Part shown: in pieces, positions 13,106-63,447 of the stretch
Layout of the letters: each line of letters begins with the position of its first letter
Position numbering within the stretch: the first letter of the stretch is position 1
IMG/VR virus record: IMGVR_UViG_3300028920_000022
Coordinates: 310,001-374,000 of that record
Length of the DNA: 64,000 bases
Reading direction: 5' to 3' (one strand)
The notes under the pieces: generated by a model
Databases searched by the model: none
Told to the model about the DNA's origin: nothing
What the model saw: only the letters and a program-made list of their open reading frames with translations
Position numbers and translations under genes: made by a program

Positions 13106-13107
13106 TC

Positions 13108-20643: not shown

Positions 20644-20952
20644 ATGTCAGATACACTAGGGTCTTTAATTGATAAATTATTAACTGCCGATTTAAAAATG
20701 TGGCACAACCAAGAAGTGCTTTATCAAATACGTCGTATGACTTTTGATGAATTTAAAGAAAAATATTGGCAAACTGAAGATGGAGCAGAAAAACTGTGGC
20801 AAGCATTAAAGAAGGCATGTGATCTGAATGTTCAGCGTAATCAGTTAATTGACGAAGTGGATGAAAAGATTGTGGAAATGATTGCTGACGCAAAAAATGG
20901 GGAAAATTTAGATAATGGAAAACATATTCAAAGAAAACATAAAACCTATTAA
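20644..20952 (+). CDS. DUF4254-like helical protein
   Basis: TLGSLIDKL and DLNVQRNQLIDEVD; purine-rich RBS (GGAAAGGA) upstream. Confidence 0.5.
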   Translation: MSDTLGSLIDKLLTADLKMWHNQEVLYQIRRMTFDEFKEKYWQTEDGAEKLWQALKKACDLNVQRNQLIDEVDEKIVEMIADAKNGENLDNGKHIQRKHKTY

Positions 20953-21400
20953 TATAGAATGTAGAGTTTTAAAAAATACAGACGTTGATAGTTTAAGTAT
21001 TTTTTTTGATGAAATTATGTCCAATAATGATAATGAATTGTTTTGTCCGCACCCATTTACAAAGGAGTATGCACATAAAATTTGCAATTATAGTGGTTTA
21101 GATGTGTATTGTGCTGTGTTTGGTGATAAAAACATATTAGGTTATGGAATGTTGCGGGGATGGGATGAAGGATTTGAAATACCATCTCTTGGTATTGCAA
21201 TTAGTAGAAGTGCTCGTGGGATAGGCTTGGGTAAAATGTTTATGTTGTTTTTGCACAGCTTCGCAAAATGTAGGGGTTCAAAATATATAAGACTAACAGT
21301 ATATGATAAAAATATAATTGCTAAAAATTTGTATAATGAATTGGGTTATAGTTTTAAACGATATGATGAAAACAGCGCTGTTGGTATTTTGGAATTATGA
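20915..21400 (+). CDS. GNAT N-acetyltransferase
   Basis: SLGIAI..ARGIGLG and LTVYDKNIIAKNLYNELGY. Confidence 0.85.
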   Translation: MENIFKENIKPINIECRVLKNTDVDSLSIFFDEIMSNNDNELFCPHPFTKEYAHKICNYSGLDVYCAVFGDKNILGYGMLRGWDEGFEIPSLGIAISRSARGIGLGKMFMLFLHSFAKCRGSKYIRLTVYDKNIIAKNLYNELGYSFKRYDENSAVGILEL

Positions 21401-22221
21401 GTTCACGATTAGAGTTAAAACTTTCTATACGTTTAGGGCTGGGAGATTGTATTTATATATGGGGAGCCTTAAATGGTGTTAAAAATAATTATAAGCGAAT
21501 TTATGTTAACGCCGACTGGCACATATTAAAGTTATATAAAAATAATTCGCAAAAATATAAGAAGTTTTTTATAAAATTTATGGAACTGGTATATAGCGAC
21601 CCCTGTTTTATATTAAATAGTAAAACAGAATGTCCTGGTAGAAATTTGGTTAACAAATGGTTTCCCGGTATTCCGCCAGCAATTCCAAGAATTTCAAGAT
21701 TGTGTGACAACCATCCGAAAAAACCAAATGAAGATTATATAGTTATAACAACTAAAGTAAGAGAGTTTAATAGACAGTGGTTTGTTGAATTGCAGAGCGA
21801 ACTAATGGCAGAAATTAAACGGTTATCTGAAAAATACAAAATTGTAGTGATAGGCGAAAGAGAAGTAGAAATGAATGCCGAATATAAAATTCATGGATCG
21901 TTAAAAATATATTCATTGTACAATGATTTTAATAATGAATTTAATTTTATAGATTTAACAGTACCGACATTATGCGGAGAACTACCGCCCGATATAGACA
22001 ACATAAAGATAGATTGTGGGTTAATGCGCGATGCGAAGGCAGTAATTACAATCGGTAGTGGTGGAAACCTTGCGTTAGCCACAGCTACAGCTACAAATCT
22101 AATTGGGATAAGAAAAGATCGTTATAGGTTTATGGATTCAATTTATAAAAATTATACCAACAACATTAAAGTTAGCGATAACGCATCGCAATTTTTAGAA
22201 AGATTACGTGAAGTGAAGTGA
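21397..22221 (+). CDS. Hypothetical GT9-like protein
   Basis: GLGDCI N-terminal motif, IVVIGE, ITIGSGGN. Confidence 0.45.
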   Translation: MSSRLELKLSIRLGLGDCIYIWGALNGVKNNYKRIYVNADWHILKLYKNNSQKYKKFFIKFMELVYSDPCFILNSKTECPGRNLVNKWFPGIPPAIPRISRLCDNHPKKPNEDYIVITTKVREFNRQWFVELQSELMAEIKRLSEKYKIVVIGEREVEMNAEYKIHGSLKIYSLYNDFNNEFNFIDLTVPTLCGELPPDIDNIKIDCGLMRDAKAVITIGSGGNLALATATATNLIGIRKDRYRFMDSIYKNYTNNIKVSDNASQFLERLREVK

Positions 22222-22222
22222 A

Positions 22223-22963
22223 ATGAATTTAATATTATGTTGTTATAACCGTGTAGGGTATGAAATATTAAATTATACCATTAATAACTGTAAATTTTCT
22301 CGAATTGCGGTATTTACCCATGATAACGGCATTGATGGCAGAATTATAGATAAATGTAAAGATAATAATATATTTTGTTCAACAGAGAATATAAACAAAG
22401 TAGATTTGCCATTTAAACCGGATATTATCTCTAGTGTTTATTACAGGTATATAATTAAGGAACATGTTATAAAAGCGTGTAATGGTAAAATATTTAATGC
22501 GCACCCATCATTATTGCCAAAGCATAGAGGGTGCTCCTCGGTACCTTGGGCTATTATCGAAGGAGATCAAGTAACTGGAATTACTTTTCATTATATAGAT
22601 AAGAACATAGATACTGGAAGGATATTGTTACAAATTTCAATACAAATATCAAAAGATGAAACTCAGGAAAGTTTATATAATAAATGTATGGATAAAGTAA
22701 GAGATATTATGGATAAAGTAAGAGATATGTGGCCGGCGGCTTTATCTTTGGTACAAAATGGTTTTGTTGGAATTTGCCAAGAAGGAATTTCTTCATATCA
22801 TAAAAGAGGAGTACCTTATGATGGAAAAATTGATCCGAATTGGAACGAAGATAAAGTGTGTCGTTTTATAAGGGCAATGTATTTTCCTCCATTACCAGGA
22901 CCTACGTTAAATGGTAAAGTAATTACATCAATAAAAAGTTTCCGAGAGGAGGTTTTAAAATGA
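22223..22963 (+). CDS. Sugar N-formyltransferase (Fmt/ArnA/WbkC-like)
   Basis: FNAHPSLLPKHRG, TGITFHYIDKNIDTG, FIRAMYFPP. Confidence 0.88.
   Translation: MNLILCCYNRVGYEILNYTINNCKFSRIAVFTHDNGIDGRIIDKCKDNNIFCSTENINKVDLPFKPDIISSVYYRYIIKEHVIKACNGKIFNAHPSLLPKHRGCSSVPWAIIEGDQVTGITFHYIDKNIDTGRILLQISIQISKDETQESLYNKCMDKVRDIMDKVRDMWPAALSLVQNGFVGICQEGISSYHKRGVPYDGKIDPNWNEDKVCRFIRAMYFPPLPGPTLNGKVITSIKSFREEVLK
22687..22728 (+). repeat. Perfect 21-bp tandem duplication, in frame
   Basis: TATGGATAAAGTAAGAGATAT twice, encoding MDKVRDI-MDKVRDM. Confidence 0.95.
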
Positions 22964-23769
22964 AACATTGTTGCTTTAGTATTTTGTATAACGAACTTCC
23001 GTTTTTAAAACAAAAATTACCATTTCTTTATAAGTATTTTGATCAAATAATTTTATATGATTTACATGTTGATTCGAAAACATTTTCTACAGATGGCAGC
23101 CACGAGTACATTAAAAAATACCCAGATCCAAAGAATAAAATAACATTGATAGAAAAAAAAGATTTGTCTGGTGTTAAGGGCGTGGGTATAAGCTTTGAGA
23201 CAAAAAGAAAGATGTTTGCTGTTGGGTCTAGATATGTAAGAAATGATATTGATGTTTTTTGGTGTCCAGATTTAGATGAGTTTTTTTCTAAATCGTTAAT
23301 TTCTAAAGTTGAAAAACTTTTCTCATCTAAAAGTGGTACTATAATGATCCCTCACGTTATATTTTTTAAAAATGAAAAATTTGTTTTTTGTAAAAAGAAC
23401 GGTGATGATAGAATAATATTACCGTACTCAAGAATAGCAAAGCATAAACCGGGAAACGTGTATGGGCATTGCAACATACAAAACCAACATAAGCCATTGA
23501 TTAGAATTTCTGACGAATTCCTGTTTCATTTTGCTTATGTTGGTAAAAACAAAATGAAATTTAAAAAAGGTTTGTATGCCAGATTTACCCCTAAAATTGT
23601 TGGGTACTACAATGATGTGTGGAAAAACTTTGATGAATCAAAAGTAGGAGATGATGTGTATGGTTTTCCCAACATGCACCCGGCTCTACAAGTAGGTATC
23701 AAAAGACATTCTTATAATTTCCCGGATTACATAAATATTCATGAAATGATTAACGATTTGTATGTCTAA
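22960..23769 (+). CDS. Glycosyltransferase family 2-like
   Basis: ILYNE, STDGS, WCPDLDEFF (DxD), HFAYV. Confidence 0.65.
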   Translation: MKHCCFSILYNELPFLKQKLPFLYKYFDQIILYDLHVDSKTFSTDGSHEYIKKYPDPKNKITLIEKKDLSGVKGVGISFETKRKMFAVGSRYVRNDIDVFWCPDLDEFFSKSLISKVEKLFSSKSGTIMIPHVIFFKNEKFVFCKKNGDDRIILPYSRIAKHKPGNVYGHCNIQNQHKPLIRISDEFLFHFAYVGKNKMKFKKGLYARFTPKIVGYYNDVWKNFDESKVGDDVYGFPNMHPALQVGIKRHSYNFPDYINIHEMINDLYV

Positions 23770-24854
23770 AATAATACTAAATGATAATGATCTGGTGACT
23801 CATCCGCTATCAAGCGGTTCTGTTTTTTATTATAAAGATAAATTATACGTATCTTGGAACCCTATCGGTTTAAATATATTGGAAAAACTTCCGATACAAA
23901 AAGTGAAACCAACTAACTTTTTGTATCTAGAAACCCCAGTGTGGGAGTTAAATAACTATGAACATAGGGTTAGAATTCAAGAATGTACTCCGTACATGGT
24001 TAAAGAACTGTTATTAGCTTTGTGTAATTTACACATTGAATTGCACAAATGCGGTTTATTTTTACATGATGTGCACGAGGCTAACATAAATTATACACAA
24101 GATGGTATTGTTTGGTTAGATTTAGGATCTATAAAAGTAGGGAAGGGACATACAGAACCTGCGTTTTTTGGTACATGTTATCTTGCGCAAAAATATTTAT
24201 ATAATGATTTTAAATTTGGGCATACTAAATATAACATAAAACAGTTACAAAAAAGCACAGCTCCAATACGCAATCTTGTCACAATAAAAGAAAATACACT
24301 TGTTTGGAATGAATTTAAAAAAATAATTAACAATAAAGAGGTAAAAATTAAAAAATCATAAAAATGTTAATAAAAAAGCCTGTATAGTTACCGATATGAT
24401 GAATGATATAAGTTTTAGAACTGTAACCGATGTGGCGTGTAATAAAGGATATTATGCGATGTATGCCGCAAAACGTGCGCAGTCGGTGGTTGGTTTTGAT
24501 GTAGATGTTCAATGTGTTCATGAAGCTACAAAATTAGCAAAGAAAAGGAAAGCCAATGCTATATTTGCTGTGAAAAACGTGAATACTTTAGTTAATTGCA
24601 AGCTGCATGAAAATTTAAGATTTTACTCAGATTTAGTGTTGGCTTTGGCAATTGTTCATCATTTAAATGGAGTGGTTAAACCAAAGGCTTTTGCTAGAGG
24701 ACTTAGTAATATTTCAAATAAATATATTCTTATAGAAGATATTAATTCTGCAAAATTATATAAAGATGAGTTTGTAAAATTGGGATTTGAATTAATCAGG
24801 CGTGAGGAAAGCTATCCTTTGCCAAGATCGTTGTCGTTATACAGGAGAAAATAA
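23762..24854 (+). pseudogene. NoeA-like kinase-fold/SAM-methyltransferase gene split into two ORFs (23762-24361 and 24396-24854)
   Basis: First ORF has LHDVHEANI..WLDLGS (kinase-like). Second has DVACNKGYY, VGFD and LALAIVHH, and its frame is open upstream to 24345, overlapping the first in an A-rich tract. Confidence 0.55.
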
Positions 24855-25472
24855 ATGTATTATGGGCAATTTTTAATTGATAAATATTTGCATCAAACAT
24901 TTTTTAATGATAAAAAGCGTGGTTTTTTTGTAGAATGTGGCGCTTTAGATGGCAAGTTGGAATCATCTTGTTTGTTTTTTGAGCATTCGTTGTCGTGGAC
25001 TGGAATGAATATAGAAGCTGTTCCTCCATTATTTAAAATGTTGCAGAAAAATCGCCCAAACTGTATTAATATAAATATAGCATTATCTAATAATAACGAT
25101 GAAGCAATTTTTAAACATGCAATCCACCCTAAACACGGGATGTTGTTTGGGAACGGATCTTTGGGGCACCACGAATCCCACATGCAAGATTTATTAAAAC
25201 AAGGGTGCAACTTTAAGGAATACAAAGTACAATGTAAAAAATTTTCTCAAGTGTTTAAAAATGAAGTTCCGATTGATTTATTTGTTTTAGACGTAGAAGG
25301 ACATGAGCTACAGGCTCTTGAAGGAATTTTGGAAATAGACGATGAATTTTTGCCTAAGATATTTTGTATCGAATATACTTTTTCTGGACTAGATAACATT
25401 TCTAATATGTTAAAAAAATATAAATTACACTCAACGCGCCAACAAAACGCTATATATGTAAAAAATGTCTAG
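24855..25472 (+). CDS. FkbM-family methyltransferase
   Basis: FFVECGALDG, WTGMNIEA, LDVEGHELQAL. Confidence 0.88.
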   Translation: MYYGQFLIDKYLHQTFFNDKKRGFFVECGALDGKLESSCLFFEHSLSWTGMNIEAVPPLFKMLQKNRPNCININIALSNNNDEAIFKHAIHPKHGMLFGNGSLGHHESHMQDLLKQGCNFKEYKVQCKKFSQVFKNEVPIDLFVLDVEGHELQALEGILEIDDEFLPKIFCIEYTFSGLDNISNMLKKYKLHSTRQQNAIYVKNV

Positions 25473-26088
25473 ATTACAGTTTGTTCAACCAATTTTAGAT
25501 ATTTCTCCATCGATTGCTATCGTTGGATCAAGTGGGAATCTGTGTAATCATAAATATGGAAAAATTATTGATCAGTTTCAGGATGTTATTAGATTTAATC
25601 GTGCTCCAACAAAAAATTATGAAGAAATAGTTGGACATAAAACTACTCTTCGTGTAGCTAATAATCATGTTTTTATTAATCTTGCTCCATCACTAAAAGG
25701 ATTTACTGATCAGCCGCCAGATTTTATTAGGAATCTTCGTAATAGTAGAATTTTGTACATGGGTCCGAGTATGGAACAAGAAAATAAAGAAAAGCATACC
25801 CATGCAAGTAATGAGTTGTTTGTGTTTAAATTTGAAAGTTTGGGAGATTTAAAACGCGCTGTTGGATTTGTTTCGCCTCGTCCTCCCAGCGTAGGGTGTA
25901 TAATGATTTGTTTATGTGTGATAGCGAACATAAAACCATATTTATTTGGATTCGATTTAAATGTAAATGATTCATCTAGAACGCATTATTGGGAAGATAG
26001 ACCAAGCTTAAGCCCATGTCATAAAATAGATTATGAGAAGAGGTTTTTAAACAAATTAGCAAAAGCGGGGAAAATAAAAATTAAATGA
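25465..26088 (+). CDS. GT29 sialyltransferase-like glycosyltransferase
   Basis: Sialylmotif L (IAIVGSSGNL..YGKIID..VIRFNRAP..VGHKTTLR), motif S (PSVG..C..LFGF), HYW, and VS-like H-x4-E (HKIDYE). Confidence 0.8.
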   Translation: MSRLQFVQPILDISPSIAIVGSSGNLCNHKYGKIIDQFQDVIRFNRAPTKNYEEIVGHKTTLRVANNHVFINLAPSLKGFTDQPPDFIRNLRNSRILYMGPSMEQENKEKHTHASNELFVFKFESLGDLKRAVGFVSPRPPSVGCIMICLCVIANIKPYLFGFDLNVNDSSRTHYWEDRPSLSPCHKIDYEKRFLNKLAKAGKIKIK

Positions 26089-27047
26089 ATACAAATCTTA
26101 AAAAACATTGGTCTAATATGCACGGTGAGCGCAGACATCTTTTGTCAAATTTGCCGAAGTGGAAAGTTAAGAGAATTATTTCTAATTTTAATAATTATTT
26201 TGTAAATAATTTACCTATGGAAAAAATTAACTTTGCAATAGATTGGGGCTGCGGCGGCGGGGTTTTAACAAATGAATTGAAAAAAGTAACTTCCGTATTG
26301 GCTCTTGATATTTGTGAAGATAGCCTTAGTAACTGTGTAAAATATGCAAACCCAGATCGTGCCGAATTACTACCTAACAGCTTGTGTGATTTTAAATATA
26401 ATTACGGAAAAGCTGATTTAATTTTAGCACATGCCGTGGTCTGGCATTTCCCTACGTTGGAATATTTTAAACAAGTAGTTGACATTTGGACTAATGATAT
26501 ACAGGCAACATATATTGCCTTCAATACAAAAAAAATAACTAAACAGAACTTTGTGCAGGCTACAAATTACAAAAATGATTTTTTAGACGCTTTACTTTTA
26601 AAAGATGAGTTTGTTATAGATTTGTTTAATTCAAAAGGTTATTCGTTGTTGTTTTCAGGTACATTTAATAGGAAACCAAAGCCTCAAACATATTTTATAT
26701 TTTTTAAGGATCCGCGTAAAATATTGATAGATATAGATGAAACTATCTGTACTACTCCTGGAAACAAAAATATACCGAGAGATTATAATACAGCATCCCC
26801 GATTATCGAAAATATAAAAGCAATTAATAAATTATATGATACTGGGCATCACATAACCTATTGGACGGCTAGAGGATCTGGGACTGGAGTTGATTGGTCC
26901 GACGTTACATATAAACAATTAAAAAAATGGGGTGTTAAATATCATAAAGTGTTGTTTGGGAAACCAGAGTATGATTTGTTTATTGATGATAAAGTGTTAA
27001 ATGTTAGAGATTGGGAAAAAAATAAACGATTTTTGCCAAAATATTAA
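26085..27047 (+). CDS. Fusion of class I SAM methyltransferase and HAD phosphatase
   Basis: N-terminal DWGCGGG; C-terminal DIDETIC, WTARG, GKP..DLFIDDK. Confidence 0.8.
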   Translation: MNTNLKKHWSNMHGERRHLLSNLPKWKVKRIISNFNNYFVNNLPMEKINFAIDWGCGGGVLTNELKKVTSVLALDICEDSLSNCVKYANPDRAELLPNSLCDFKYNYGKADLILAHAVVWHFPTLEYFKQVVDIWTNDIQATYIAFNTKKITKQNFVQATNYKNDFLDALLLKDEFVIDLFNSKGYSLLFSGTFNRKPKPQTYFIFFKDPRKILIDIDETICTTPGNKNIPRDYNTASPIIENIKAINKLYDTGHHITYWTARGSGTGVDWSDVTYKQLKKWGVKYHKVLFGKPEYDLFIDDKVLNVRDWEKNKRFLPKY

Positions 27048-27063
27048 TATTTTGCTGTTTAGA

Positions 27064-28023
27064 ATGTATGAGAAAATGTATAATAGAAATATTAGAATGT
27101 ATGATGAGCCACACGCTCCTGTTTTTATCAGCAAAAATAAATGCAAACATAAGAGTGTAATTGCTATTCCGCCATCTTATTATAAAAATGAATGCCTTGA
27201 CGTTCAGGGTGTTTTAAAATATATACATTATTTAGTTGAATGCGGTGCTACAACGCTAATGACTACTGCAGGCACATCACAATTTAATCTATTAACAACA
27301 AATGAAATTCATATATTTAATAAAGTGGTGGCAACAGCCAAATGCTCAAAGATATTTGGAATACCTCCTATTTCTTCAAATGAATCTGTTAAGTTTGTGC
27401 GACGGGCAAAAGAATATATTGGCAAATCAAATCTTATGGTTTTGTATCCAGATAGGTTTTATGATTATGGGTCTATATATTCCCATATTGCAAAAATTAG
27501 GGAGGCGTCTTTATATCCAGTGTATTTACACGCCATGCCAATGCGTAAAGGTACTGGTGGAGAATGGAACTTTACTTCTGATATAATATCAAGTTTATTT
27601 GAAAAAAAACTGATATGTGGAATAAAAGAAGAACATAGTAATCTTCAAGAGTCATATAATTTTATTAGAAATTTGCCCCCGAATTTAGACGTGATCGTTG
27701 CTGGTGGTAGCATGAGACGTCATCAGTTTTTAAAAACGGCCGGAGCTAATTCATTTTTGTCTGGAATAGGAAATTTATTTCCACAAATAGAAATCAATTA
27801 TTGTAACGAAATAGATAGTGGGCGTTTTGGTGACAGTCAAATAGCTTTAGAGTCGAAATTGTTCGATGTCTTTTTAAAATATGGGTGGCACCCAAGTTTA
27901 AGAGTAGCCTTGGCTCATTTGGGCTTATTGAGTCATTATAATCGTAATCCGTGGCCTAAATTAAGCGGTGCTGCGATTGATGAAATTAAAAATGTAATAT
28001 CCGAGGTCGTAAATGAAAAATAA
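27064..28023 (+). CDS. DapA/NanA-family (DHDPS-like) aldolase/lyase; start uncertain (27001, 27064 or 27097)
   Basis: MTTAGTSQFNLL, GIKEE Schiff-base Lys region, GANSFLSG. Confidence 0.65.
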   Translation: MYEKMYNRNIRMYDEPHAPVFISKNKCKHKSVIAIPPSYYKNECLDVQGVLKYIHYLVECGATTLMTTAGTSQFNLLTTNEIHIFNKVVATAKCSKIFGIPPISSNESVKFVRRAKEYIGKSNLMVLYPDRFYDYGSIYSHIAKIREASLYPVYLHAMPMRKGTGGEWNFTSDIISSLFEKKLICGIKEEHSNLQESYNFIRNLPPNLDVIVAGGSMRRHQFLKTAGANSFLSGIGNLFPQIEINYCNEIDSGRFGDSQIALESKLFDVFLKYGWHPSLRVALAHLGLLSHYNRNPWPKLSGAAIDEIKNVISEVVNEK

Positions 28024-28789
28024 AGTGTGGATTTTGGGTCCCTGTAGTTTAGAGGGTAGAGATTTATTTATAAACACATTATCAGCAATTGAACCAATTA
28101 TGCGTGGAAAACAATGGTATATGAAAGCTAGTTTTGATAAGGCAAACAGAACATCTCTGTATGGCGGTAGAGGTCCGGGATTAGAAGAGTCACAAAAAGT
28201 TTGGAAAGAAGCCCACGAACTTTTTCCACACGTTAAATTTATAACTGACGTTCATGAAGTACATCAGGTAGAAAAGCTGGTAGGATATGTAGATGTTGTA
28301 CAAACGCCAGCCTTTTTGTGCCGACAAACAGATCTTATCGTTGAATGTGCGAAGCATTTTCAAGCCATCAATATTAAAAAGGGACAATGGATAGGACCTA
28401 ACAATCTTATCAAATCTGTGGATAAAGTAAAAGAAACAAACCCAAATTGCGAAGCATGGATTTGTGATCGCGGATCTAATTTTGGATATCATGATTTGTT
28501 CGTTAATTTTGGAATTGTTGACGAATTAAAAGAATATTATGATAAGATTATTTTGGACTGTACGCATTCTACCCAACGGTCAAGAAAAGTACATGGAAAA
28601 CAGGGTGATAGAGTTTTGGCAGAACGATATTTTGTGTCTGCTGATGTTTTTAATTATGATGGCGTTTTTGCAGAAGTTCATCCAAACCCGCCTGAATCTG
28701 TTTCTGACGCTGATTGTGTTTTAGATTTGTTTAGATTAAAAATGTTAGTGCAAAAAGCAGATGCCGTTGGGAAGGTGGTTTGTGAATAA
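28013..28789 (+). CDS. kdsA: 3-deoxy-D-manno-octulosonate 8-phosphate synthase
   Basis: GPCSLE, KASFDKANRTS, TDVHE, PAFLCRQTDL, NIKKGQ, RGSNFGY, DCTHS, EVHPNP..SDA. Confidence 0.9.
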   Translation: MKNKVWILGPCSLEGRDLFINTLSAIEPIMRGKQWYMKASFDKANRTSLYGGRGPGLEESQKVWKEAHELFPHVKFITDVHEVHQVEKLVGYVDVVQTPAFLCRQTDLIVECAKHFQAINIKKGQWIGPNNLIKSVDKVKETNPNCEAWICDRGSNFGYHDLFVNFGIVDELKEYYDKIILDCTHSTQRSRKVHGKQGDRVLAERYFVSADVFNYDGVFAEVHPNPPESVSDADCVLDLFRLKMLVQKADAVGKVVCE

Positions 28790-29450
28790 ATTAGCTGTAA
28801 TCCCGGCAAGAGCAGGTTCAACTCGTCTAAAAAATAAAAATATATATCCATTAGGAGGTAAACCTTTAATAAGATGGGTTACTGAAGCAGTCGTTAATTC
28901 TGGGTGTTTTGATAAAATATTGGTTTCTACTGATGGAGATAAAATATTCGATGCCGTAAAGGATTTACCGGTAGAAAGGCATGTTAGACCGGCTAGTTTA
29001 GCAACTACAAAATCTACAGTTTTAAACGCTATGTTGGATTTAATTGAACATAGTAATGTAGAATATGATGTTTTTTCATATTTTTTGCCAACCTGTCCAT
29101 TTATTAATTGCCAAGATATACAAAATGGTATCAGACGAATAGATAAGTCTGATTTTGTAATAAGTATGACCGAGTTTTCTGAAACAATTCAGTTAGCGTG
29201 TTTAATTAATAATAGCAACGTTATTCCAGTTTTTGATAATTTAGAAATTGGCGCAACAAATAGCAAGTTTATTAAAAAGTACTACAAACCTTCAGGTGCA
29301 TTTTATATTGGTAAATGGGATAAAATTTTAGAATATAAAAATTTTTTTAGTGGAAATGTTCAGGCTGTTATTGTCCCAAAAGAACGCTCAATTGACATAA
29401 ATAACCACTATGATCTTTTATATGCCGAGAGTGTGTTAAAATTACGTTAA
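28782..29450 (+). CDS. CMP-ulosonic acid synthetase (NeuA/KdsB cytidylyltransferase family)
   Basis: IPARAGSTRLKNKN, LGGKPLI, VSTD, PTCPF, SIDIN. GTG start overlapping the kdsA end. Confidence 0.88.
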   Translation: MNKLAVIPARAGSTRLKNKNIYPLGGKPLIRWVTEAVVNSGCFDKILVSTDGDKIFDAVKDLPVERHVRPASLATTKSTVLNAMLDLIEHSNVEYDVFSYFLPTCPFINCQDIQNGIRRIDKSDFVISMTEFSETIQLACLINNSNVIPVFDNLEIGATNSKFIKKYYKPSGAFYIGKWDKILEYKNFFSGNVQAVIVPKERSIDINNHYDLLYAESVLKLR

Positions 29451-29458
29451 ATTTATCA

Positions 29459-30541
29459 GTGATGATTCCCGTTTATAAACCCTATCTTCCCAAACATATA
29501 TTACGATATGCGCATGATGCCTTAGGTTCCGGCTGGCTGTCTAGAGGTAAGTATAATGCACTAGCCTCTGAAAAACTTCAAGAAATTTTGAGAGTAAAAC
29601 ATGTGCTGCTGACTAGTAACGGAACTACTGCCGGGCACCTTGTCGCAATAGCTTTAAAAGATTGCTTTGGTTATAATGAAATAATTATGCCGAATAACGT
29701 TTACGTCGCTGCGTGGAATGTTTACAAATACGAAAATATCAAAATTAATATCGTGGACGCAAATATAAAAACTTGGAATTTCGATTATAAATTGTTAGAT
29801 AAAGCAATACGGAAAAATACAGATTGTGCAGTTGGTGTTGTCCATAATCTAGGGAATATCGTAAATGTCCCAAACTTAAAACAACAATATCCGAATACCA
29901 TGTTTGTTGAAGATGCATGTGAAGGGTTTTTAGGAGAGTATTCCGGAAAACCAGTTGGAAGTGAATCGCTTTCTTTTGTTTCTTTTTTTGGTAATAAAAA
30001 TATCACCTCCGGCGAAGGCGGGGCGGTTTTAATTAATGATACGGATATATACGAATATTTGAATTGTAAACATGGTCAGGGACAACATTTTGATGATGAG
30101 CGTTTTGTGCATAGAATGTTGGGTTATAATTATCGTATGACCAATGTGCAAGCTGCTTTATTGTGTGGACAGTTGGAATGTTTGGACCAAATTAAAGAAA
30201 ACAAGAAAAGAGTTTTTGATACCTACTATAAACATCTTGGCTCTGAATTTGTTTTGCAGGAAACCGATCCTAATACCGTTTCTGCTAATTGGATGTTAGG
30301 TATAAGAGTTTCCGGTTCAAACTATAAAAATGCAGAAAGTCTATTTTCGAGTCGTGGTATAGAAATAAGACCAATGTTCTGTGATGTTGGTTTGCATGGA
30401 CATTTTGGCGGAATTTCTACTTTCAATAATGCCTATCTTTTGCGCCGGGAATGTATTGTGCTGCCAAGTTATCCAGAGTTAACCGAAGACGAAATAAAAT
30501 ATATTGTTAAAACTCTAAAAGAATATAAAGAGAACCTATGA
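29459..30541 (+). CDS. DegT/DnrJ/EryC1/StrS aminotransferase (perosamine synthase-like)
   Basis: SNGTTA, VEDACE, SFFGNKNITSGEGG, GYNYRMTNVQAA. Confidence 0.9.
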   Translation: MMIPVYKPYLPKHILRYAHDALGSGWLSRGKYNALASEKLQEILRVKHVLLTSNGTTAGHLVAIALKDCFGYNEIIMPNNVYVAAWNVYKYENIKINIVDANIKTWNFDYKLLDKAIRKNTDCAVGVVHNLGNIVNVPNLKQQYPNTMFVEDACEGFLGEYSGKPVGSESLSFVSFFGNKNITSGEGGAVLINDTDIYEYLNCKHGQGQHFDDERFVHRMLGYNYRMTNVQAALLCGQLECLDQIKENKKRVFDTYYKHLGSEFVLQETDPNTVSANWMLGIRVSGSNYKNAESLFSSRGIEIRPMFCDVGLHGHFGGISTFNNAYLLRRECIVLPSYPELTEDEIKYIVKTLKEYKENL

Positions 30542-31515
30542 AAGCATGTTTGACTGGGATTACGGGACAGACCGGGTCTTATTTGGCAGAATTGTTGCTA
30601 GAAAAAGGCTACGATGTCTATGGACTGGTACGTAGAACTAGCTCTTTTAGTACAGGACGTATAGATCATATCTATGATAAATTGCACCTTACTTATGGTG
30701 ACTTGGCGGATTATTCCTCCATCTCTTCTTGGGTGGGAGATATAAAACCGGATTTGCTATTTAACATGGCGGCTCAAAGCCATGTTAAAGTCAGCTTCGA
30801 TATTCCGGAATATACAGCCGATGTAACTGGTACTAGCGTAATTAGAGTTTTGGAAGCTATTAGAAAAAATAGCCCCAAAACAAGGTTTCTTACGGCCAGC
30901 ACGTCAGAGTTGTTCGGTAGTAGCCCTCCGCCTCAAAATGAACAAACTCCCTTTCACCCTCGCTCCCCATACGCCGTAGCTAAATTGGCGGGATTTTGGG
31001 CAACTATAAATTATAGGGAAGCATATAATCTTTTCGCTACTAATGCTATTATGTTTAATACCGAGTCGGTGAGACGTGGAGAAACTTTTGTAACCAGAAA
31101 AATTACCAGAGCAGCTACTCGTATCAAACTTGGTCTGCAAGATAAACTGGTTCTAGGTAATATCTCTGCTAAACGAGATTGGAATCATAACAAAGATACC
31201 GTCAGAGGTATGCTCATGGCTATTACCGCCAACGAACCAGATGATTATGTGATTGCTTCCGGCGAAATGCACTCTGTTCAGGAATTCGTAGAGTTGGTAT
31301 TCTCTAAGCTAGATTTAGATTGGGAGAAATACGTGGAAATAGATGAACGCTATTATCGCCCATCTGAAGTTGATGCTCTTTGTGGTGATTCTACCAAGAT
31401 TCGTAATAAATTGGGTTGGGAACCAGAATTTTCTTTTAATGATCTAGTAGAGGAAATGGTCCAGCACGATCTCGCCCTGGCTGGTAAAGAAAAGCTTTTG
31501 AAGGAAGCGGTATGA
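30538..31515 (+). CDS. gmd: GDP-mannose 4,6-dehydratase
   Basis: TGITGQTGSYLAELLL, AAQSHVKVSF, PRSPYAVAK, RGETFVTRKIT, YYRPSEVD. Confidence 0.95.
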   Translation: MKACLTGITGQTGSYLAELLLEKGYDVYGLVRRTSSFSTGRIDHIYDKLHLTYGDLADYSSISSWVGDIKPDLLFNMAAQSHVKVSFDIPEYTADVTGTSVIRVLEAIRKNSPKTRFLTASTSELFGSSPPPQNEQTPFHPRSPYAVAKLAGFWATINYREAYNLFATNAIMFNTESVRRGETFVTRKITRAATRIKLGLQDKLVLGNISAKRDWNHNKDTVRGMLMAITANEPDDYVIASGEMHSVQEFVELVFSKLDLDWEKYVEIDERYYRPSEVDALCGDSTKIRNKLGWEPEFSFNDLVEEMVQHDLALAGKEKLLKEAV

Positions 31516-32477
31516 AAATTCTAGTCACAGGTAGTTCCGGGTTTCTAGGACATCATGTTCTGGAAGAATTTTATAACAAATCTAAAGAAACCATTATTTC
31601 TCCAGGAAGTATAAATTGCGATCTAACAAACCCTAATGATGTAGATAATTATTTTAAAAATACTAGGTGTGATTGTATTCTACATTTGGCTGCTGTTTGT
31701 GGCGGAATCTTGGCGAATCGCAATAGCCCTGCAGATTTTTTAGTTAAGAATTTGCAAATGGGAATAAATATATTCGAAGCTGCAAGAAAAAATGATATTA
31801 AATACGTGTATACTCTGGGTAGCGTGTGTGGTTATCCAAAGTATTGCCAAGTTCCTTTTAAGGAGGATAACCTGTGGAATGGTTATCCTGAAGGGACTAA
31901 TGCCCCGTATGGGCACGCAAAACGTACCCTTCTAATGCTTCAAAACACTTACCGAAAACAATACGGTATTAAAGGAACACACCTAATACCGGTGAACCTG
32001 TTTGGAACCCAAGACCATTTTGATCTAATCAATAGCCACGTAATTCCTGCATTAATTCGCAAGTTTCTTACTGCTGTAGATGAACCTGCTCCATCAGTAG
32101 AATTATGGGGTAGCGGGGAAGTCAGTAGGGAGTTTCTGTATGCTCCCGATTGTGCGGAAGCAATAGTTAAAACCGTTCTTATGAAGCTAGATTATCCAGA
32201 GCCCATTAATCTAGGGACAGGACGTGATATATCTATAAGGGAATTGGCAGAAACCATTGCCAAACTATGTGGATATAAAGGAGATATTGTCTTCAATACC
32301 AATATGCCAGATGGGCAACCTAAACGCAGATTAGATGTATCTAGGGCAAAAGAAGTTCTGGGTTGGGAAGCTAAAACTTCTCTGCTGGAAGGGTTAACCC
32401 ATACAATCACGTGGTACGAAGATAATAGGCACTTGACAGAGGATTCAAATGACAAGAACAACCAAAAAAGCTCGTAA
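31512..32477 (+). CDS. fcl: GDP-L-fucose synthase
   Basis: HLAAVCGGILAN, YGHAKR, SHVIPALIRK, WGSG..SREFLY, PDGQPKR. Confidence 0.9.
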   Translation: MKILVTGSSGFLGHHVLEEFYNKSKETIISPGSINCDLTNPNDVDNYFKNTRCDCILHLAAVCGGILANRNSPADFLVKNLQMGINIFEAARKNDIKYVYTLGSVCGYPKYCQVPFKEDNLWNGYPEGTNAPYGHAKRTLLMLQNTYRKQYGIKGTHLIPVNLFGTQDHFDLINSHVIPALIRKFLTAVDEPAPSVELWGSGEVSREFLYAPDCAEAIVKTVLMKLDYPEPINLGTGRDISIRELAETIAKLCGYKGDIVFNTNMPDGQPKRRLDVSRAKEVLGWEAKTSLLEGLTHTITWYEDNRHLTEDSNDKNNQKSS

Positions 32478-33033
32478 GACCACCAAGAAAACTAGCAAGA
32501 AAACTAGCAAGAAAACTAGCAAGAAAACTAGTAAGAAAACTGTAAAGAAAGCAAATGGCACCAAGGTAAGACGTGTTACTCCTGACAACACTATTAATGT
32601 TTCAGAAATAGCCTCTACATTGGGATATGATGAGTTGGCAAAACAGCTAACTGTCGAAAAACCAAAACCTGTAGTTACCGATGTTACCAGGAATGGCAAG
32701 AACGTTTATAAGCGGTATGACAATGCAAAGGTAGAGGAATCTTCGGATGAGTTTTTGCGTAAGTTTTCTGACATGAGTGAGACAGAGTTTGCTGCTTGGA
32801 TTTTGGGTAGAGAAGCTGCTGAAAAGATCGTTCAGGCTGAGGAAACCTTAGCCAAGCTGACCAAAGAATATTGGCAGGCAAAACGTAGGCTTATTTGTGC
32901 CACTCAGGCGCTTAATGCAGCTTATGCTAAACTAGAGGAAAAAGGCACTTTAGTCACTTCTAGTGAATTGTCCAAGAGCGAAGCCCGAACTGTTGTAGCG
33001 AAAGCATTAGAGGAAGAACTCTGGAATAGGTAA
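32449..33033 (+). CDS. Hypothetical protein with histone H1-like Lys-rich N-terminal tail and predicted coiled coil
   Basis: KKARKTTKKTSKKTSKKTSKKTSKKTVKK N-terminus. Confidence 0.6.
   Translation: MTRTTKKARKTTKKTSKKTSKKTSKKTSKKTVKKANGTKVRRVTPDNTINVSEIASTLGYDELAKQLTVEKPKPVVTDVTRNGKNVYKRYDNAKVEESSDEFLRKFSDMSETEFAAWILGREAAEKIVQAEETLAKLTKEYWQAKRRLICATQALNAAYAKLEEKGTLVTSSELSKSEARTVVAKALEEELWNR
32485..32541 (+). repeat. 12-bp tandem repeat (AAGAAAACTAGC), about 4.75 copies
   Basis: Three perfect units, one ending T, and one partial; encodes KKTS. Confidence 0.95.
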
Positions 33034-34010
33034 TGGGTAGGACCAAAATTTTATGCACAGGTAGTGGCGGGTTTATATTTTCTAATTTTGTTCGTCAAAT
33101 ATTAAAATTTAACCCACCATCTGTAAAAGCCAAATATGAAGTTGTTGGTGTGGATAAGTGTACTTTACCTAAAGTATTGAATACTATTTATACCAACAGA
33201 GGTCATAAGTTTCATATTGGTGATGTAACAGATAGACATTTTATGAATATTATATTTGAGCTAGAACGCCCAGATATAGTAATTCACGCTGCTGCCGAAA
33301 CTTTTGTTGATAATGCAATTGAAGATGCTAACAAATTTGTTAAAACAAATGTAGAGGGAACACAAGTTATAATAGACATGTGTTTAAAATGGAATGTAAA
33401 AAGATGTGTGTACATCTCTACTGACGAAGTATATGGGCATCTGGTTAGTGAAGATTTATCGTCTTGGACGGAACATTCTATTCTTAATCCACGCAACCCA
33501 TATTCTGCCACCAAGGCAGCTGGCGAGTTGCTAATAAGAGCTGCACATGAAACTCATGGATTGCCCTATAATATTACTCGATCTTGCAACAATTATGGTC
33601 CCAGACAACCAGTTCGTAATCTAATCCCTAAAATTATTGCCAACATTCATCATGAGAGACCGGTGCCTATTTTTGGCCAAGGTATGCAGATACGTGATTG
33701 GATCCATGTTCAGGACTGTTGTGCTGCAATAATTAAAATAATAGAAGATGCTCCACTTAATGAAATATATAACATATCTGCAAAACAGGAATATACGAAT
33801 ATAGAGGTATTTCATGAGATTTGCAATATATTGGGTCGAGGGCATGATCTATTAAAGTTTGTTGAAGACAGAAGGGGACATGATTTTCGATACTCAATAA
33901 ACAACCAAAAAATGTTAGATTTAGGTTGGGAACCCAAATTCAAGTTTAAAGCTGGGTTAGAGCATACGGTCGATTGGTACATGAAAAACACTTGGTTTTT
34001 GAAGGATTAA
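33033..34010 (+). CDS. rfbB: dTDP-glucose 4,6-dehydratase
   Basis: TGSGGFI, HAAAETFVD, ISTDEVYG, PYSATKA, NNYGPRQ, RDWIHVQD, DRRGHDFRY. Confidence 0.9.
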   Translation: MGRTKILCTGSGGFIFSNFVRQILKFNPPSVKAKYEVVGVDKCTLPKVLNTIYTNRGHKFHIGDVTDRHFMNIIFELERPDIVIHAAAETFVDNAIEDANKFVKTNVEGTQVIIDMCLKWNVKRCVYISTDEVYGHLVSEDLSSWTEHSILNPRNPYSATKAAGELLIRAAHETHGLPYNITRSCNNYGPRQPVRNLIPKIIANIHHERPVPIFGQGMQIRDWIHVQDCCAAIIKIIEDAPLNEIYNISAKQEYTNIEVFHEICNILGRGHDLLKFVEDRRGHDFRYSINNQKMLDLGWEPKFKFKAGLEHTVDWYMKNTWFLKD

Positions 34011-34291: not shown

Positions 34292-34651
34292 ATGGATAAT
34301 TTAATTGATAAGATTGTACCATATTTACAAGCCAGGCTGTCAGATTCTGATGGGCAAGTTTTTGATATAGAAGATTTAAAGAAATTTATAAGAATATCTA
34401 TAAGTATTAATGCGCCATATCCTGATAATGATTTAGATAATTACTTTAAAATTCATTTGGAAAGCATAGTTAGTTATGCTGCTGTTAAAGCTTTGGCTGC
34501 ACATGCGTTGAAAGAAAAGGGTTGCGAGTTTAGAGATGTCACTGACACCACATTGCCACCTAAATTGAGTGAGTTTTTGTTACAGGCGTCTCAACAAGAG
34601 TTTGATAGTTGGATGCGTATAAAAGAATTAGAGGAAAGAAATGGGAGTTAA
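34292..34651 (+). CDS. Hypothetical protein
   Basis: 119-aa ORF with GAGG RBS. Confidence 0.55.
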   Translation: MDNLIDKIVPYLQARLSDSDGQVFDIEDLKKFIRISISINAPYPDNDLDNYFKIHLESIVSYAAVKALAAHALKEKGCEFRDVTDTTLPPKLSEFLLQASQQEFDSWMRIKELEERNGS

Positions 34652-58269: not shown

Positions 58270-58272
58270 AAA

Positions 58273-63386: not shown

Positions 63387-63447
63387 CCCGTCTCGCCGCG
63401 GTCGCCCCGTTCGTTGCGGAGCCGACCAACAAAGGTTATCGCAAAAC

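What the first reader, a model, noticed from the sequence alone, without database searches (positions are those of the whole stretch)
25465..29450. Self-contained ulosonic-acid pathway feeding a GT29 sialyltransferase-like enzyme
Seen: five contiguous genes: GT29-like transferase with L/S/III/VS sialylmotifs, methyltransferase-HAD phosphatase fusion, DapA/NanA-like aldolase, KdsA and a CMP-ulosonate synthetase. Known: synthase, phosphatase and cytidylyltransferase yield a CMP-activated ulosonate, and GT29 enzymes (best known from eukaryotes) use such donors. Inference: the phage makes and transfers Kdo or a novel, possibly methylated, Kdo-like sugar. The extra aldolase and the absence of kdsD in the window hint at a non-standard precursor.
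Basis: partly seen in the sequence, partly recalled or inferred. Interest (0 to 1): 0.75.

Follow-up and report, generated by a model that had tools for sequence, protein, structure and literature searches.

The report
Phage Kdo-type sugar pathway with GT29 transferase
A 459-kb marine-sediment phage carries a tight five-gene module that should make a CMP-activated Kdo-type acidic sugar and attach it with a sialyltransferase-like (GT29) enzyme; the module recurs in many uncultured marine phages but has not been described.

Summary
Window 25465-29450 has five overlapping + strand genes:
- a 207-aa GT29 with all four sialylmotifs (Pfam E 5e-24; fold closest to mammalian sialyltransferases);
- a SAM-methyltransferase fused to a small HAD phosphatase;
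- a DHDPS/NAL-superfamily protein;
- a metal-type KDO8P synthase with every catalytic and A5P-binding residue I could check;
- a NeuA-like, not KdsB-like, CMP-ulosonate synthetase.

The genome is a 458,729-bp virus record. It has no other GT29, cytidylyltransferase or NeuB, and no KdsD. The pathway therefore runs through KdsA but is not self-contained.

The module recurs in dozens of marine viral contigs. GT29 lies beside a cytidylyltransferase in 24 of 27 loci. Natural fusions (HAD+NAL-like, synthetase+HAD, GT29+methyltransferase) tie the parts together. In near-identical backbones a [NAL-like + KdsA] cassette replaces a [NeuB + NAL-like + kinase] cassette.

The NAL-like protein belongs to a virus-dominated clade. 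It keeps the Schiff-base lysine but has an invariant His where the catalytic Tyr normally sits. Its role is unknown.

No membrane, flippase or priming enzyme is present, so a cytoplasmic acceptor, probably virion proteins, is the most likely target. That step is inferred.

Verdict: real, and a new variant of known kinds.

The parts
25465..26088 (+). GT29-like CMP-ulosonate transferase, 207 aa. It is a soluble stand-alone catalytic domain. Motif L is 25513-25653, S is 25885-25953, III (HYWE) is 25984-25995 and VS (H186..E191) is 26020-26037.
   Evidence: Pfam PF00777 E 4.8e-24. Alignment to ST3Gal-I. Invariant R43 F44 N45 G144 G162 Y175 H186. AF2 pLDDT 93, and the top 30 PDB folds are all mammalian GT29, with GT42 next.
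26085..26714 (+). N-terminal class I SAM-methyltransferase domain of the fusion protein (residues about 1-210).
   Evidence: PF13649/PF08241 E 2e-7. Stand-alone 203-213-aa homologues sit in the same position in related loci.
26715..27047 (+). C-terminal small HAD phosphatase domain (residues about 211-320, nucleophile motif D216-I-D218-E-T220). Proposed ulosonate-phosphate phosphatase. It is not a KdsC orthologue.
   Evidence: PDB 9iqw E 7.4e-14. Weak TIGR01689 hit. Stand-alone 100-120-aa homologues 46-60% identical in related loci. Fusions to the NAL-like protein and to the CMP synthetase occur elsewhere.
27097..28023 (+). DHDPS/NAL-superfamily protein of a virus-dominated clade. The ORF opens at 27001, and the likely start is 27064-27097. 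Schiff-base Lys177 is at 27625-27627 and invariant His145 at 27529-27531, numbered from 27097. Role unknown.
   Evidence: PF00701 E 1.7e-11, below every NCBIfam cut-off. Alignment to T. maritima DHDPS. Family alignments. AF2 pLDDT 93, TM 0.82 to E. coli NAL at 16-17% identity. Atlas clusters are up to 90% viruses.
28013..28789 (+). KdsA, 3-deoxy-8-phosphooctulonate synthase of the metal-dependent (Cys11) class, 258 aa.
   Evidence: NF003543 226.6 bits and TIGR01362 213.9 bits. E 1e-44 to Aquifex KDO8PS with C11, K38/K43, A-N-R-T-S, D79, H81, Q97, R104, K122, R153, H185, E221 and D232 conserved.
28761..29450 (+). CMP-ulosonate synthetase, NeuA/PseF-like, 229 aa. It is the only CTP_transf_3 gene in the genome.
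   Evidence: PF02348 E 3.4e-25. Best NCBIfam hit is PseF at 124.7 bits, against at most 58 bits for KdsB. Full-length match to PDB 9ftb 'NeuA' at E 5e-27, while KdsB structures match only the N-terminus. Single copy.
22960..25472 (+). Conserved upstream partners: a GT2-like protein (22960-23769), an unknown 199-aa ORF, a SAM methyltransferase (24396-24854) and an FkbM methyltransferase (24855-25472).
   Evidence: Cluster c2 (GT2-like via a homologue's Pfam hit) lies just upstream of GT29 in 19 loci. Pfam.
7834..34010 (+). Surrounding glycan island of about 26 kb. It holds GT4, three GT2 and a GT1-like gene, weak sulfotransferase-like, GNAT and formyltransferase genes, then DegT aminotransferase, GDP-mannose 4,6-dehydratase and two epimerase/reductases. 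All products are predicted soluble.
   Evidence: Pfam. No TM-like segment in any ORF. GC 34.4% against 39.5% for the genome.

Best explanation
The five genes form one operon-like module of a tailed jumbo phage. The module makes a CMP-activated 3-deoxy-2-ulosonic acid of the Kdo type and transfers it to a glycan.

Proposed steps:
1. KdsA condenses PEP with host-supplied arabinose-5-phosphate to Kdo-8-phosphate.
2. The small HAD domain removes the phosphate.
3. The NeuA-like cytidylyltransferase makes the CMP-sugar.
4. The soluble GT29-like enzyme, an inverting transferase with His186 as the predicted base, caps an acceptor glycan built by the neighbouring soluble glycosyltransferases.

The SAM-methyltransferase fused to the phosphatase most likely O-methylates the sugar. 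The NAL-superfamily protein is always paired with the synthase. It most likely does Schiff-base chemistry on the 2-keto-3-deoxy acid, but which reaction is unknown.

No membrane protein, flippase, polymerase or priming transferase is encoded, and fibre-like lectin-domain proteins flank the island. The most likely acceptor is therefore a cytoplasmic one, namely phage structural proteins.

Shown: gene identities, conserved residues, synteny, fusions, and the genome-wide absence of alternatives. Inferred: substrates, product, methylation site and acceptor.
For: - Family and fold assignments.
- KdsA active-site and A5P-site conservation across 10 phage homologues.
- The genome has one GT29, one cytidylyltransferase, no NeuB and no KdsD.
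- GT29 lies beside a cytidylyltransferase in 24 of 27 related loci. Each carries KdsA or NeuB plus a NAL-like gene and often a HAD gene.
- Rosetta-stone fusions: MT+HAD (here), HAD+NAL-like (P0170), CMP synthetase+HAD (P0250) and GT29+Methyltransf_11 (Atlas).
- GT29 enzymes are reported or proposed to use CMP-Kdo in plants, prasinophyte scales and the E. coli K6 capsule (PMC11288761, PMC13213038, PMC13171606).
- No TM segments in the island. No Bac_transf or Glycos_transf_4 priming enzyme. No Tet/JBP or ThyA-family enzyme for hydroxymethyl-pyrimidine DNA.
- Flanking proteins of 850-1587 aa carry ConA-like/Laminin_G domains and weak T7 tail-fibre hits.
Against: - No biochemical data exist.
- KdsA scores just under NCBIfam's equivalog cut-off (226.6 against 242).
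- The cytidylyltransferase is NeuA-like. In this subclade a conserved DID motif reads DIN.
- Closely related GT29 and cytidylyltransferase pairs (89% and 86% identical) serve a NeuB cassette in another contig. The donor could therefore be broader than, or different from, plain Kdo.
- The NAL-like protein's role is unexplained and could change the product.
- The virion-protein acceptor is inferred only from absences and neighbourhood. Host priming enzymes could still route the glycan to the cell surface.
Confidence: 0.65

Rival explanations
1. The module remodels the host cell surface (LPS core, O-antigen or capsule) during infection, for example for superinfection exclusion, rather than glycosylating virions.
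For: Cell-wall and LPS genes, including kdsA/kdsB in cyanophage S-SCSM2R, are usually read this way (PMC12801897). Bacterial GT29 are linked to LPS or capsule (PMC5811610, PMC13171606).
Against: No membrane protein, flippase, polymerase, ligase or priming phosphoglycosyl transferase is found in the island or the genome. A 26-kb all-soluble island would have to rely entirely on host export machinery.
Confidence: 0.25
2. The sugar is attached to phage DNA as a base hypermodification, as shown for Kdo on 5-hydroxymethylcytosine by other phage glycosyltransferases.
For: Phage GTs can place Kdo-like and other sugars on 5hmC (bioRxiv 10.1101/2023.12.21.572611). The island adjoins the replication module of TubZ, UvsW, DnaB and RNR.
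Against: Those DNA GTs are GT-B fold, not GT29. The genome has no Tet/JBP dioxygenase and no thymidylate-synthase-family hydroxymethylase (the Tet_JBP search had no positive control). More than eight GTs plus methyl-, formyl- and weak sulfotransferase-like genes fit a complex protein-linked or polysaccharide glycan better.
Confidence: 0.07
3. The product is not Kdo. The NAL-like enzyme, the methyltransferase or both convert the KdsA product into a new ulosonic acid, or the NAL-like enzyme itself builds a second one (for example a Dha-like 2-keto-3-deoxy-aldaric acid from pyruvate). That sugar is what is CMP-activated and transferred.
For: The NAL-like gene is translationally coupled to KdsA in every KdsA-type locus, and a second subfamily (about 22% identical) pairs with NeuB. 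Lys is invariant, His replaces Tyr, and several Arg are invariant, including the DHDPS R138-equivalent. The activating enzyme is NeuA-like rather than KdsB-like. HAD+NAL-like fusions exist.
Against: No known reaction can be assigned. The structure is equidistant from DHDPS and NAL. The complex prediction gave no answer.
Confidence: 0.3
4. The five genes are an accidental neighbourhood of unrelated auxiliary metabolic genes. KdsA and the cytidylyltransferase merely boost host LPS synthesis, and the GT29 uses another donor.
For: None specific. KdsA/KdsB occur without a detectable GT29 relative in S-SCSM2R.
Against: Recurrent synteny across loci whose GT29 proteins are only 35-57% identical, together with multiple domain fusions, is not expected by chance. 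GT29 donors known so far are CMP-ulosonates.
Confidence: 0.03

Closest known systems
Bacterial-type GT29 sialyltransferase-like proteins (Petit et al. 2018, PMC5811610) and plant GT29 RG-II CMP-Kdo transferase RCKT1/MGP2 (PMC11288761; PMC13213038)
   Same: All four sialylmotifs are present. As reported for bacterial GT29, there is no transmembrane domain and no conserved motif L/S disulfide. The fold is the GT29 variant of GT-A, and the predicted donor is a CMP-ulosonate, with Kdo as in plants.
   Different: It is phage-encoded and only 207 aa, a bare catalytic domain. It belongs to a clade whose nearest Atlas clusters are 75-100% viral. That clade was not found in 185,579 cellular species genomes by a narrow pattern search. 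The acceptor is unknown.
Canonical Kdo pathway KdsD-KdsA-KdsC-KdsB of Gram-negative bacteria, and phage/giant-virus copies such as cyanophage S-SCSM2R kdsA+kdsB (PMC12801897)
   Same: The KdsA homologue has the full active site, and the order is phosphatase then CMP activation.
   Different: There is no KdsD. The phosphatase is a small capsule-type HAD (9iqw-like), not KdsC, and is fused to a methyltransferase. The activating enzyme is NeuA/PseF-like, not KdsB. There is an extra NAL-like enzyme, and the transferase is GT29 rather than GT30/GT73/GT99/GT107.
Kdn pathway of Bacteroides (Kdn-9-P synthase, HAD Kdn-9-P phosphatase, CMP-Kdn synthetase); from my own knowledge, not checked here
   Same: The logic is the same: a PEP-dependent synthase acts on a sugar phosphate, followed by a HAD phosphatase and a NeuA-type synthetase. 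The sister 'NeuB flavour' of this phage module (L010, L061) looks like this.
   Different: The window uses a KdsA-type (DAHP_synth_1) synthase, not NeuB, and the genome has no NeuB.
DHDPS / N-acetylneuraminate lyase superfamily
   Same: It has the TIM-barrel fold (TM 0.8-0.83). The Schiff-base Lys sits in a GIKE motif, and a Thr/Ser-containing carboxylate-binding loop is kept.
   Different: Catalytic Tyr133/137 is replaced by an invariant His. GTTGE reads AGTSQ, and there is a clade-specific GWH motif. It scores below every NCBIfam cut-off.
Virus-encoded glycan machineries that decorate virions (giant-virus glycans, PMC9614988; mycobacteriophage capsid glycosylation, from my own knowledge)
   Same: It is a large island of soluble GTs and nucleotide-sugar enzymes with no export machinery.
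   Different: An acidic ulosonate cap added by a GT29 has not, to my knowledge or in the searched library, been described for a phage.

Membership tests
CAZy GT29 (sialyltransferase-like) | Sequence match to the family model above its curated threshold | tested here: met
   PF00777 scores 85.6 bits against a cut-off of 23, E 4.8e-24, covering model positions 58-271 of 272. Confirmed on the genome.
CAZy GT29 (sialyltransferase-like) | Sialylmotifs L, S, III and VS, with the motif III His-Tyr and the motif VS His...Glu | tested here: met
   Aligned to pig ST3Gal-I. R43 F44 N45, G144, G162, Y175 and H186 are invariant, and H174 and E191 are at least 90% conserved in 23 homologues.
CAZy GT29 (sialyltransferase-like) | GT-A variant fold of GT29, closer to GT29 than to GT42 | tested here: met
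   AF2 model pLDDT 93. Foldseek ranks 1-30 are all mammalian GT29 (E 3e-11 to 1e-6). GT42 CstII/CstI follow from rank 31 (E at least 2e-5).
CAZy GT29 (sialyltransferase-like) | Inverting transfer from a CMP-activated ulosonic acid | not testable with these tools
   Only context supports it: an adjacent cytidylyltransferase in 24 of 27 loci.
KDO8P synthase (KdsA) | Equivalog-level score to curated KdsA models | tested here: not met
   NF003543 scores 226.6 bits against a cut-off of 242, and TIGR01362 scores 213.9 against 314. This is a near miss. DAHP synthase models score about 50 bits, so it is clearly on the KdsA side.
KDO8P synthase (KdsA) | KANR(S/T)S motif and the A5P, PEP and metal ligands (Aquifex C11, K41, K46, N48, R49, S50, R106, K124, R154, H185, E222, D233; residue list from my own knowledge) | tested here: met
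   All are conserved in the pairwise alignment and invariant across 10 phage homologues. S50 is the exception and reads Thr, or Ser in one homologue.
KDO8P synthase (KdsA) | Catalyses PEP + D-arabinose-5-P -> Kdo-8-P | not testable with these tools
   An enzyme assay is needed.
CMP-Kdo synthetase (KdsB) | Match to KdsB models over the full length | tested here: not met
   KdsB models score at most 58 bits against cut-offs of 155-281, and only for the N-terminal 60-150 residues.
CMP-nonulosonate synthetase family (NeuA/PseF/LegF type, PF02348) | Family match and full-length similarity to solved NeuA enzymes | tested here: met
   PF02348 scores 89.6 bits against 22.6. 9ftb 'NeuA' matches at E 5e-27 and N. 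meningitidis NeuA at 2e-19, both full length. The PseF equivalog cut-off is not reached (124.7 against 205.7), so substrate specificity is open.
Kdo-8-P phosphatase KdsC (HAD subfamily IIIA) | Match to the KdsC/YrbI models | tested here: not met
   No KdsC model appears among NCBIfam hits at E up to 0.1. The domain instead matches PDB 9iqw 'capsule biosynthesis protein'.
HAD phosphatase superfamily | Motif I DxDx(T/V), motif II Ser/Thr, motif III Lys, motif IV acidic pair | tested here: met
   DIDET, WTARG, GKP and FIDDK are read from the translation and the 9iqw alignment.
DHDPS (DapA) / N-acetylneuraminate lyase (NanA) | Schiff-base lysine | tested here: met
   Lys177 in GIKEE aligns to the DHDPS catalytic Lys. 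It is invariant in 27 sequences.
DHDPS (DapA) / N-acetylneuraminate lyase (NanA) | Catalytic Tyr (DHDPS Y133 / NAL Y137) and the GxTGE loop | tested here: not met
   The Tyr is replaced by invariant His145. The loop reads AGTSQ in the KdsA-paired subfamily, and only its Ser is invariant across both subfamilies.
DHDPS (DapA) / N-acetylneuraminate lyase (NanA) | Equivalog-level score | tested here: not met
   dapA scores 49.7 bits against 206, and NanA scores 26.2 against 281.

The most novel reading that the evidence does not exclude
Marine tailed phages carry their own lineage of sialyltransferase-like GT29 enzymes and a modular 'ulosonate cassette'. The synthase (KdsA or NeuB) and a matched, previously uncharacterised His-for-Tyr NAL-superfamily enzyme are swapped as a unit. 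The phosphatase, CMP synthetase and GT29 stay the same. On this reading the NAL-like enzyme is a new ulosonate-forming or ulosonate-tailoring activity, and the phage caps its virion glycans with a new, probably methylated, acidic sugar. That would be a phage analogue of sialylation or of prasinophyte scale Kdo/5-O-methyl-Kdo/Dha chemistry.
Probability: 0.3. Interest if true: 0.8.

Novelty: new variant of a known kind. Interest (0 to 1): 0.62.

Why it matters
GT29 is the sialyltransferase family of animals, and its origin and non-sialic-acid donors are open questions. Here a compact, soluble, 207-aa GT29 sits in a phage next to the genes that should make its donor. That gives a tractable system, since all parts can be expressed in E. 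coli. It could be used to define a GT29 donor other than sialic acid and to test whether GT29 and NeuA-type enzymes are indifferent to 8- versus 9-carbon ulosonates.

It could also assign a function to a large virus-dominated NAL-superfamily clade with at least 419 members. If virions carry such acidic, methylated and possibly sulfated glycans, this would affect how marine phages stick to particles, hosts and grazers.

The phage clade is also a candidate reservoir in the evolutionary history of GT29.

Tried and rejected
- blastn of the five genes against 50,697 phage records found no match.
- tblastn of GT29 found only LR756508.1. tblastn of KdsA found only LR756500.1, S-SCSM2R and Acinetobacter contigs.
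- The genome contigs pattern scans found no GT29-clade hit. They found one 3.1-kb Flavobacteriales MAG contig for the NAL-like clade. The patterns are narrow, so this is weak evidence of absence.
- Promoter and terminator scans gave counts equal to shuffles and are uninformative.
- The complex prediction for NAL-like + KdsA returned 'no answer' and counts neither way.
- Pfam Gp23 and sheath searches of the genome were negative. The Gp23 search had no positive control, so the phage's morphotype is not settled. TubZ has only a 25%-identical relative in Bacillus phage G.
- Literature searches for phage GT29, phage ulosonate pathways and a DHDPS-like/KdsA pairing found nothing specific.
- I rejected a nonulosonate (sialic/Pse/Leg) product, because the genome has no NeuB.
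- I rejected a KdsB or KdsC orthologue assignment.
- I considered the NAL-like protein as a supplier of A5P. I judged this unlikely because the alpha-keto-acid-binding loop and Lys are retained, but I did not test it.
- Organism names for AlphaFold DB hits were masked, so no taxonomy is drawn.

Full report
**Setting**

The window is bases 310001-374000 of a single-contig 458,729-bp virus record that CheckV rates complete. DNA identical to the five-gene stretch is held by a marine-sediment metagenome run.

Every ORF of 100 aa or more that is not nested inside a longer ORF lies on the + strand. The window also encodes:
- a TubZ/PhuZ-type tubulin, a UvsW-like helicase and a DnaB helicase;
- a ribonucleotide reductase interrupted by a LAGLIDADG intein;
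- very large proteins with ConA-like/Laminin_G domains and weak T7 tail-fibre N-terminal matches.

The nearest ESM Atlas clusters of two of the module's proteins are labelled mostly Uroviricota. I therefore treat the genome as a jumbo tailed phage of unknown host.

**The observation**

The five ORFs are 25465-26088, 26085-27047, 27001-28023, 28013-28789 and 28761-29450. They overlap or abut on the + strand.

*Gene 1 (GT29).*
- It matches Pfam Glyco_transf_29 at E 4.8e-24, 85.6 bits against a cut-off of 23.
- phmmer aligns its motif L region (residues 17-74) and its motif S/III/VS region (139-206) to pig ST3Gal-I.
- In an alignment of 23 homologues, the invariant positions are exactly the sialylmotif residues: R43 F44 N45, G144, G162, Y175 and H186. 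H174 and E191 are at least 90% conserved.
- An AlphaFold2 model has pLDDT 93 and pTM 0.91. Its 30 best PDB matches are all mammalian GT29 enzymes (E 3e-11 to 1e-6). GT42 CstII/CstI appear only from rank 31.
- The protein is a bare 207-aa catalytic domain. My hydropathy scan flags one marginal stretch, which lies inside sialylmotif S and is not a membrane anchor. It has Ile where eukaryotic motif L has its disulfide Cys. Petit et al. reported the same features for bacterial GT29 (PMC5811610).

*Gene 2 (methyltransferase-HAD fusion).*
- The N-terminal half is a class I SAM methyltransferase (PF13649/PF08241).
- Residues 213-308 match PDB 9iqw, a 134-aa 'capsule biosynthesis protein', at E 7e-14.
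- The HAD motifs DIDET, WTARG, GKP and FIDDK are present.

*Gene 3 (DHDPS/NAL-like).*
- It is a DHDPS-family protein (PF00701, E 1.7e-11) but scores below every NCBIfam cut-off.
- Homologues are 285-300 aa, so the real start is probably 27064-27097.

*Gene 4 (KdsA).*
- NF003543 scores 226.6 bits, just under the cut-off of 242. DAHP synthase models score only about 50 bits.
- The match to Aquifex KDO8PS has E 1e-44.

*Gene 5 (cytidylyltransferase).*
- It is a CTP_transf_3 enzyme whose best model is PseF (124.7 bits), against at most 58 bits for KdsB.
- It aligns over its full length to solved NeuA enzymes, but only over the N-terminus to KdsB structures.

**Is it one pathway?**

Three lines of evidence say yes.

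*First, the genome offers no alternatives.* It has exactly one GT29, one CTP_transf_3 gene, no NeuB and no SIS-domain isomerase. The only ulosonate synthase that can feed the cytidylyltransferase is KdsA.

*Second, the arrangement recurs.*
- The GT29 has 93 relatives in a 5.8-billion-protein collection, nearly all about 205-225 aa and from marine metagenomes.
- A profile search of 1.84 billion cluster representatives finds 200 clusters at E of 1e-30 or better and 3,120 at 1e-10 or better.
- Fifty-one IMG/VR viral contigs carry a relative.
- I clustered the neighbouring ORFs of the window region and 26 fetched loci. GT29 lies next to a cytidylyltransferase in 24 of these 27.
- Loci whose GT29 is only 35-57% identical to the window's repeat the order GT29, (methyltransferase or HAD), NAL-like, KdsA, then cytidylyltransferase. 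Examples are L002, L003/L004, L014-L017, L024, L057 and L059.

*Third, natural fusions link the parts.*
- The window fuses methyltransferase to HAD. This fusion is unique in the 5.8-billion-protein collection.
- P0170 fuses HAD to the NAL-like protein, and P0250 fuses the cytidylyltransferase to HAD.
- An Atlas cluster of 71 mostly viral proteins fuses GT29 to a Methyltransf_11 domain.

**What sugar?**

The KdsA homologue retains every residue that I know to bind the metal, PEP and arabinose-5-phosphate in Aquifex KDO8PS. These are C11, K41, K46, N48, R49, S50 (here Thr), D81, H83, Q99, R106, K124, R154, H185, E222 and D233. All but the S50 position are invariant in ten phage homologues. The KANR signature separates KDO8PS from DAHP synthases.

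I therefore favour the ordinary reaction, PEP + A5P -> Kdo-8-P, and see no support for a non-standard precursor. Since no KdsD exists in the genome, the host must supply A5P. The pathway is not self-contained.

Two observations keep 'plain Kdo' from being certain.

*The NAL-like protein.*
- It is always translationally coupled to KdsA.
- It belongs to a clade of at least 419 metagenomic proteins. The nearest Atlas clusters of that clade are up to 90% viral.
- It keeps the Schiff-base Lys (GIKEE). It has an invariant His where DHDPS Y133 / NAL Y137 sits, AGTSQ in place of GTTGE, and a clade-specific GWH motif.
- Its model (pLDDT 93) is equidistant from DHDPS and NAL, with TM about 0.8 at 15-21% identity.

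*The cassette swap.*
- Many sister loci carry NeuB instead of KdsA, together with a second NAL-like subfamily that is about 22% identical. They often also carry an APH-type kinase, a cupin or TIM-barrel isomerase-like domain and the same small HAD.
- On a GT29 tree the two flavours are interleaved.
- Contigs L010 (NeuB) and L024 (KdsA) share GT29 at 89% identity, the cytidylyltransferase at 86% and the upstream GT2-like gene at 97%. The block [NeuB fusion + NAL-like B + kinase] is replaced by [NAL-like A + KdsA].
- Either the downstream enzymes are indifferent to chain length, or the two cassettes converge on similar products.
- The NAL-like subfamily co-varies with the synthase, while HAD, synthetase and GT29 do not. 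This suggests that the NAL-like enzyme handles the synthase's substrate or immediate product.

I could not assign the NAL-like reaction. A complex prediction for NAL-like + KdsA returned no answer.

Methylation of the sugar is plausible from the MT-HAD and GT29-MT fusions, but its site is unknown.

**What is the acceptor?**

The module sits in an island of about 26 kb (7834-34010). The island holds GT4, three GT2 and a GT1-like gene, several unannotated ORFs, and weak sulfotransferase-like, GNAT, formyltransferase and FkbM genes. It also holds a DegT aminotransferase, a GDP-mannose 4,6-dehydratase and two epimerase/reductases.

- None of its 33 ORFs has a convincing membrane-spanning segment. 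The only flagged stretch is the marginal one in the GT29 described above.
- The genome has neither family of priming phosphoglycosyl transferase.
- It has no Tet/JBP or thymidylate-synthase-family enzyme that would make hydroxymethyl-pyrimidine DNA for glycosylation.
- Large lectin-domain, fibre-like proteins flank the island.

I therefore rank virion-protein glycosylation first, host surface remodelling second and DNA modification a distant third. All three are inferences.

**Comparison with what is known**

- GT29 enzymes that use CMP-Kdo are reported for Arabidopsis RG-II synthesis. They are proposed for prasinophyte scales and for an E. coli K6 GT29-GT107 protein (PMC11288761, PMC13213038, PMC13171606).
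- Bacterial GT29 with all sialylmotifs are known (PMC5811610).
- Phage kdsA/kdsB were reported as a first for cyanophages in S-SCSM2R (PMC12801897).
- I found no description of a phage GT29 coupled to an ulosonate pathway, of the NAL-like/KdsA pair, or of the KdsA/NeuB cassette swap.
- The GT29 clade and the NAL-like clade were nearly absent from one-genome-per-species cellular contigs. The pattern-based scans are narrow.

I class this as a new variant of known kinds, not a new kind.

**Verdict**

The finding is real and correctly read in outline. The phage should make a CMP-activated Kdo-type sugar and transfer it with a GT29-like enzyme. 'Self-contained' and 'non-standard precursor' are not supported.

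The most interesting open parts are the His-for-Tyr NAL-like enzyme, the interchangeable KdsA/NeuB cassettes and the acceptor. Interest 0.62. Confidence in the core pathway is about 0.75, and in the virion acceptor about 0.4.

Noticed in passing
L010:8001-16328 versus L024:8001-14171: Two otherwise syntenic viral contigs share GT29 at 89% identity and the CMP synthetase at 86%. A block [NeuB-SAF-TIM-barrel fusion + NAL-like subfamily B + APH-type kinase] in one is replaced by [NAL-like subfamily A + KdsA] in the other. This looks like a clean cassette swap.
   Followed up: partly
window 41938-45081: The ribonucleotide reductase large subunit is interrupted by an intein with a LAGLIDADG homing-endonuclease domain.
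   Followed up: partly
L003:17086-19335: In a related contig the GDP-mannose 4,6-dehydratase (749 aa) carries an intein splicing domain. The flanking extein is 88% identical to the window's GMD.
   Followed up: no
window 58001-64000: GC content rises to 51-55%, against 39.5% for the genome and 30-34% in the glycan island. The rise lies in two genes of about 850 aa with ConA-like/Laminin_G domains. The island falls in the most AT-rich 20-kb bin of the genome.
   Followed up: partly
window 34641-36011: A TubZ/PhuZ-type tubulin lies next to the replication genes. Its only relative in deposited phages is Bacillus phage G, at 25% identity.
   Followed up: partly
window 5070-7748: An 892-aa protein with dockerin type I / EF-hand-like calcium-binding repeats lies directly upstream of the glycan island. 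Before it is a 1587-aa protein with a ConA-like domain. Both are possible fibre or glycan-acceptor proteins.
   Followed up: no
window 22223-22963 and 29459-32477: Formyltransferase, DegT aminotransferase, GDP-mannose 4,6-dehydratase and an epimerase/reductase together look like a route to a GDP-linked 4-amino-4,6-dideoxyhexose (perosamine-type), possibly N-formylated.
   Followed up: no
L060 (LR756508.1:309812-340429), about 12261-17354: A 484-kb uncultured phage has four tandem GT29 paralogues, followed by the same small HAD and preceded by a GMD.
   Followed up: partly
L057:1-13545: One contig carries three GT29 genes, both a NeuB and a NAL-like+KdsA pair, and two cytidylyltransferases. The one next to KdsA is 64% identical to the window's, and the other is 28% identical. 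It also carries a PhyH-type dioxygenase and a pyruvyl-transferase-like gene.
   Followed up: partly
window 28761-29450 (residues about 211-213): The DID motif of NeuA-type synthetases (Mg-binding, from my own knowledge) reads DIN in the window and in three related loci (L002, L003, L007). It reads DID in most other members of the cluster.
   Followed up: partly
window 46708-47553: A phage-encoded M24 metallopeptidase (methionine aminopeptidase-like), with a TSCPD-domain protein at 45078-45683.
   Followed up: no
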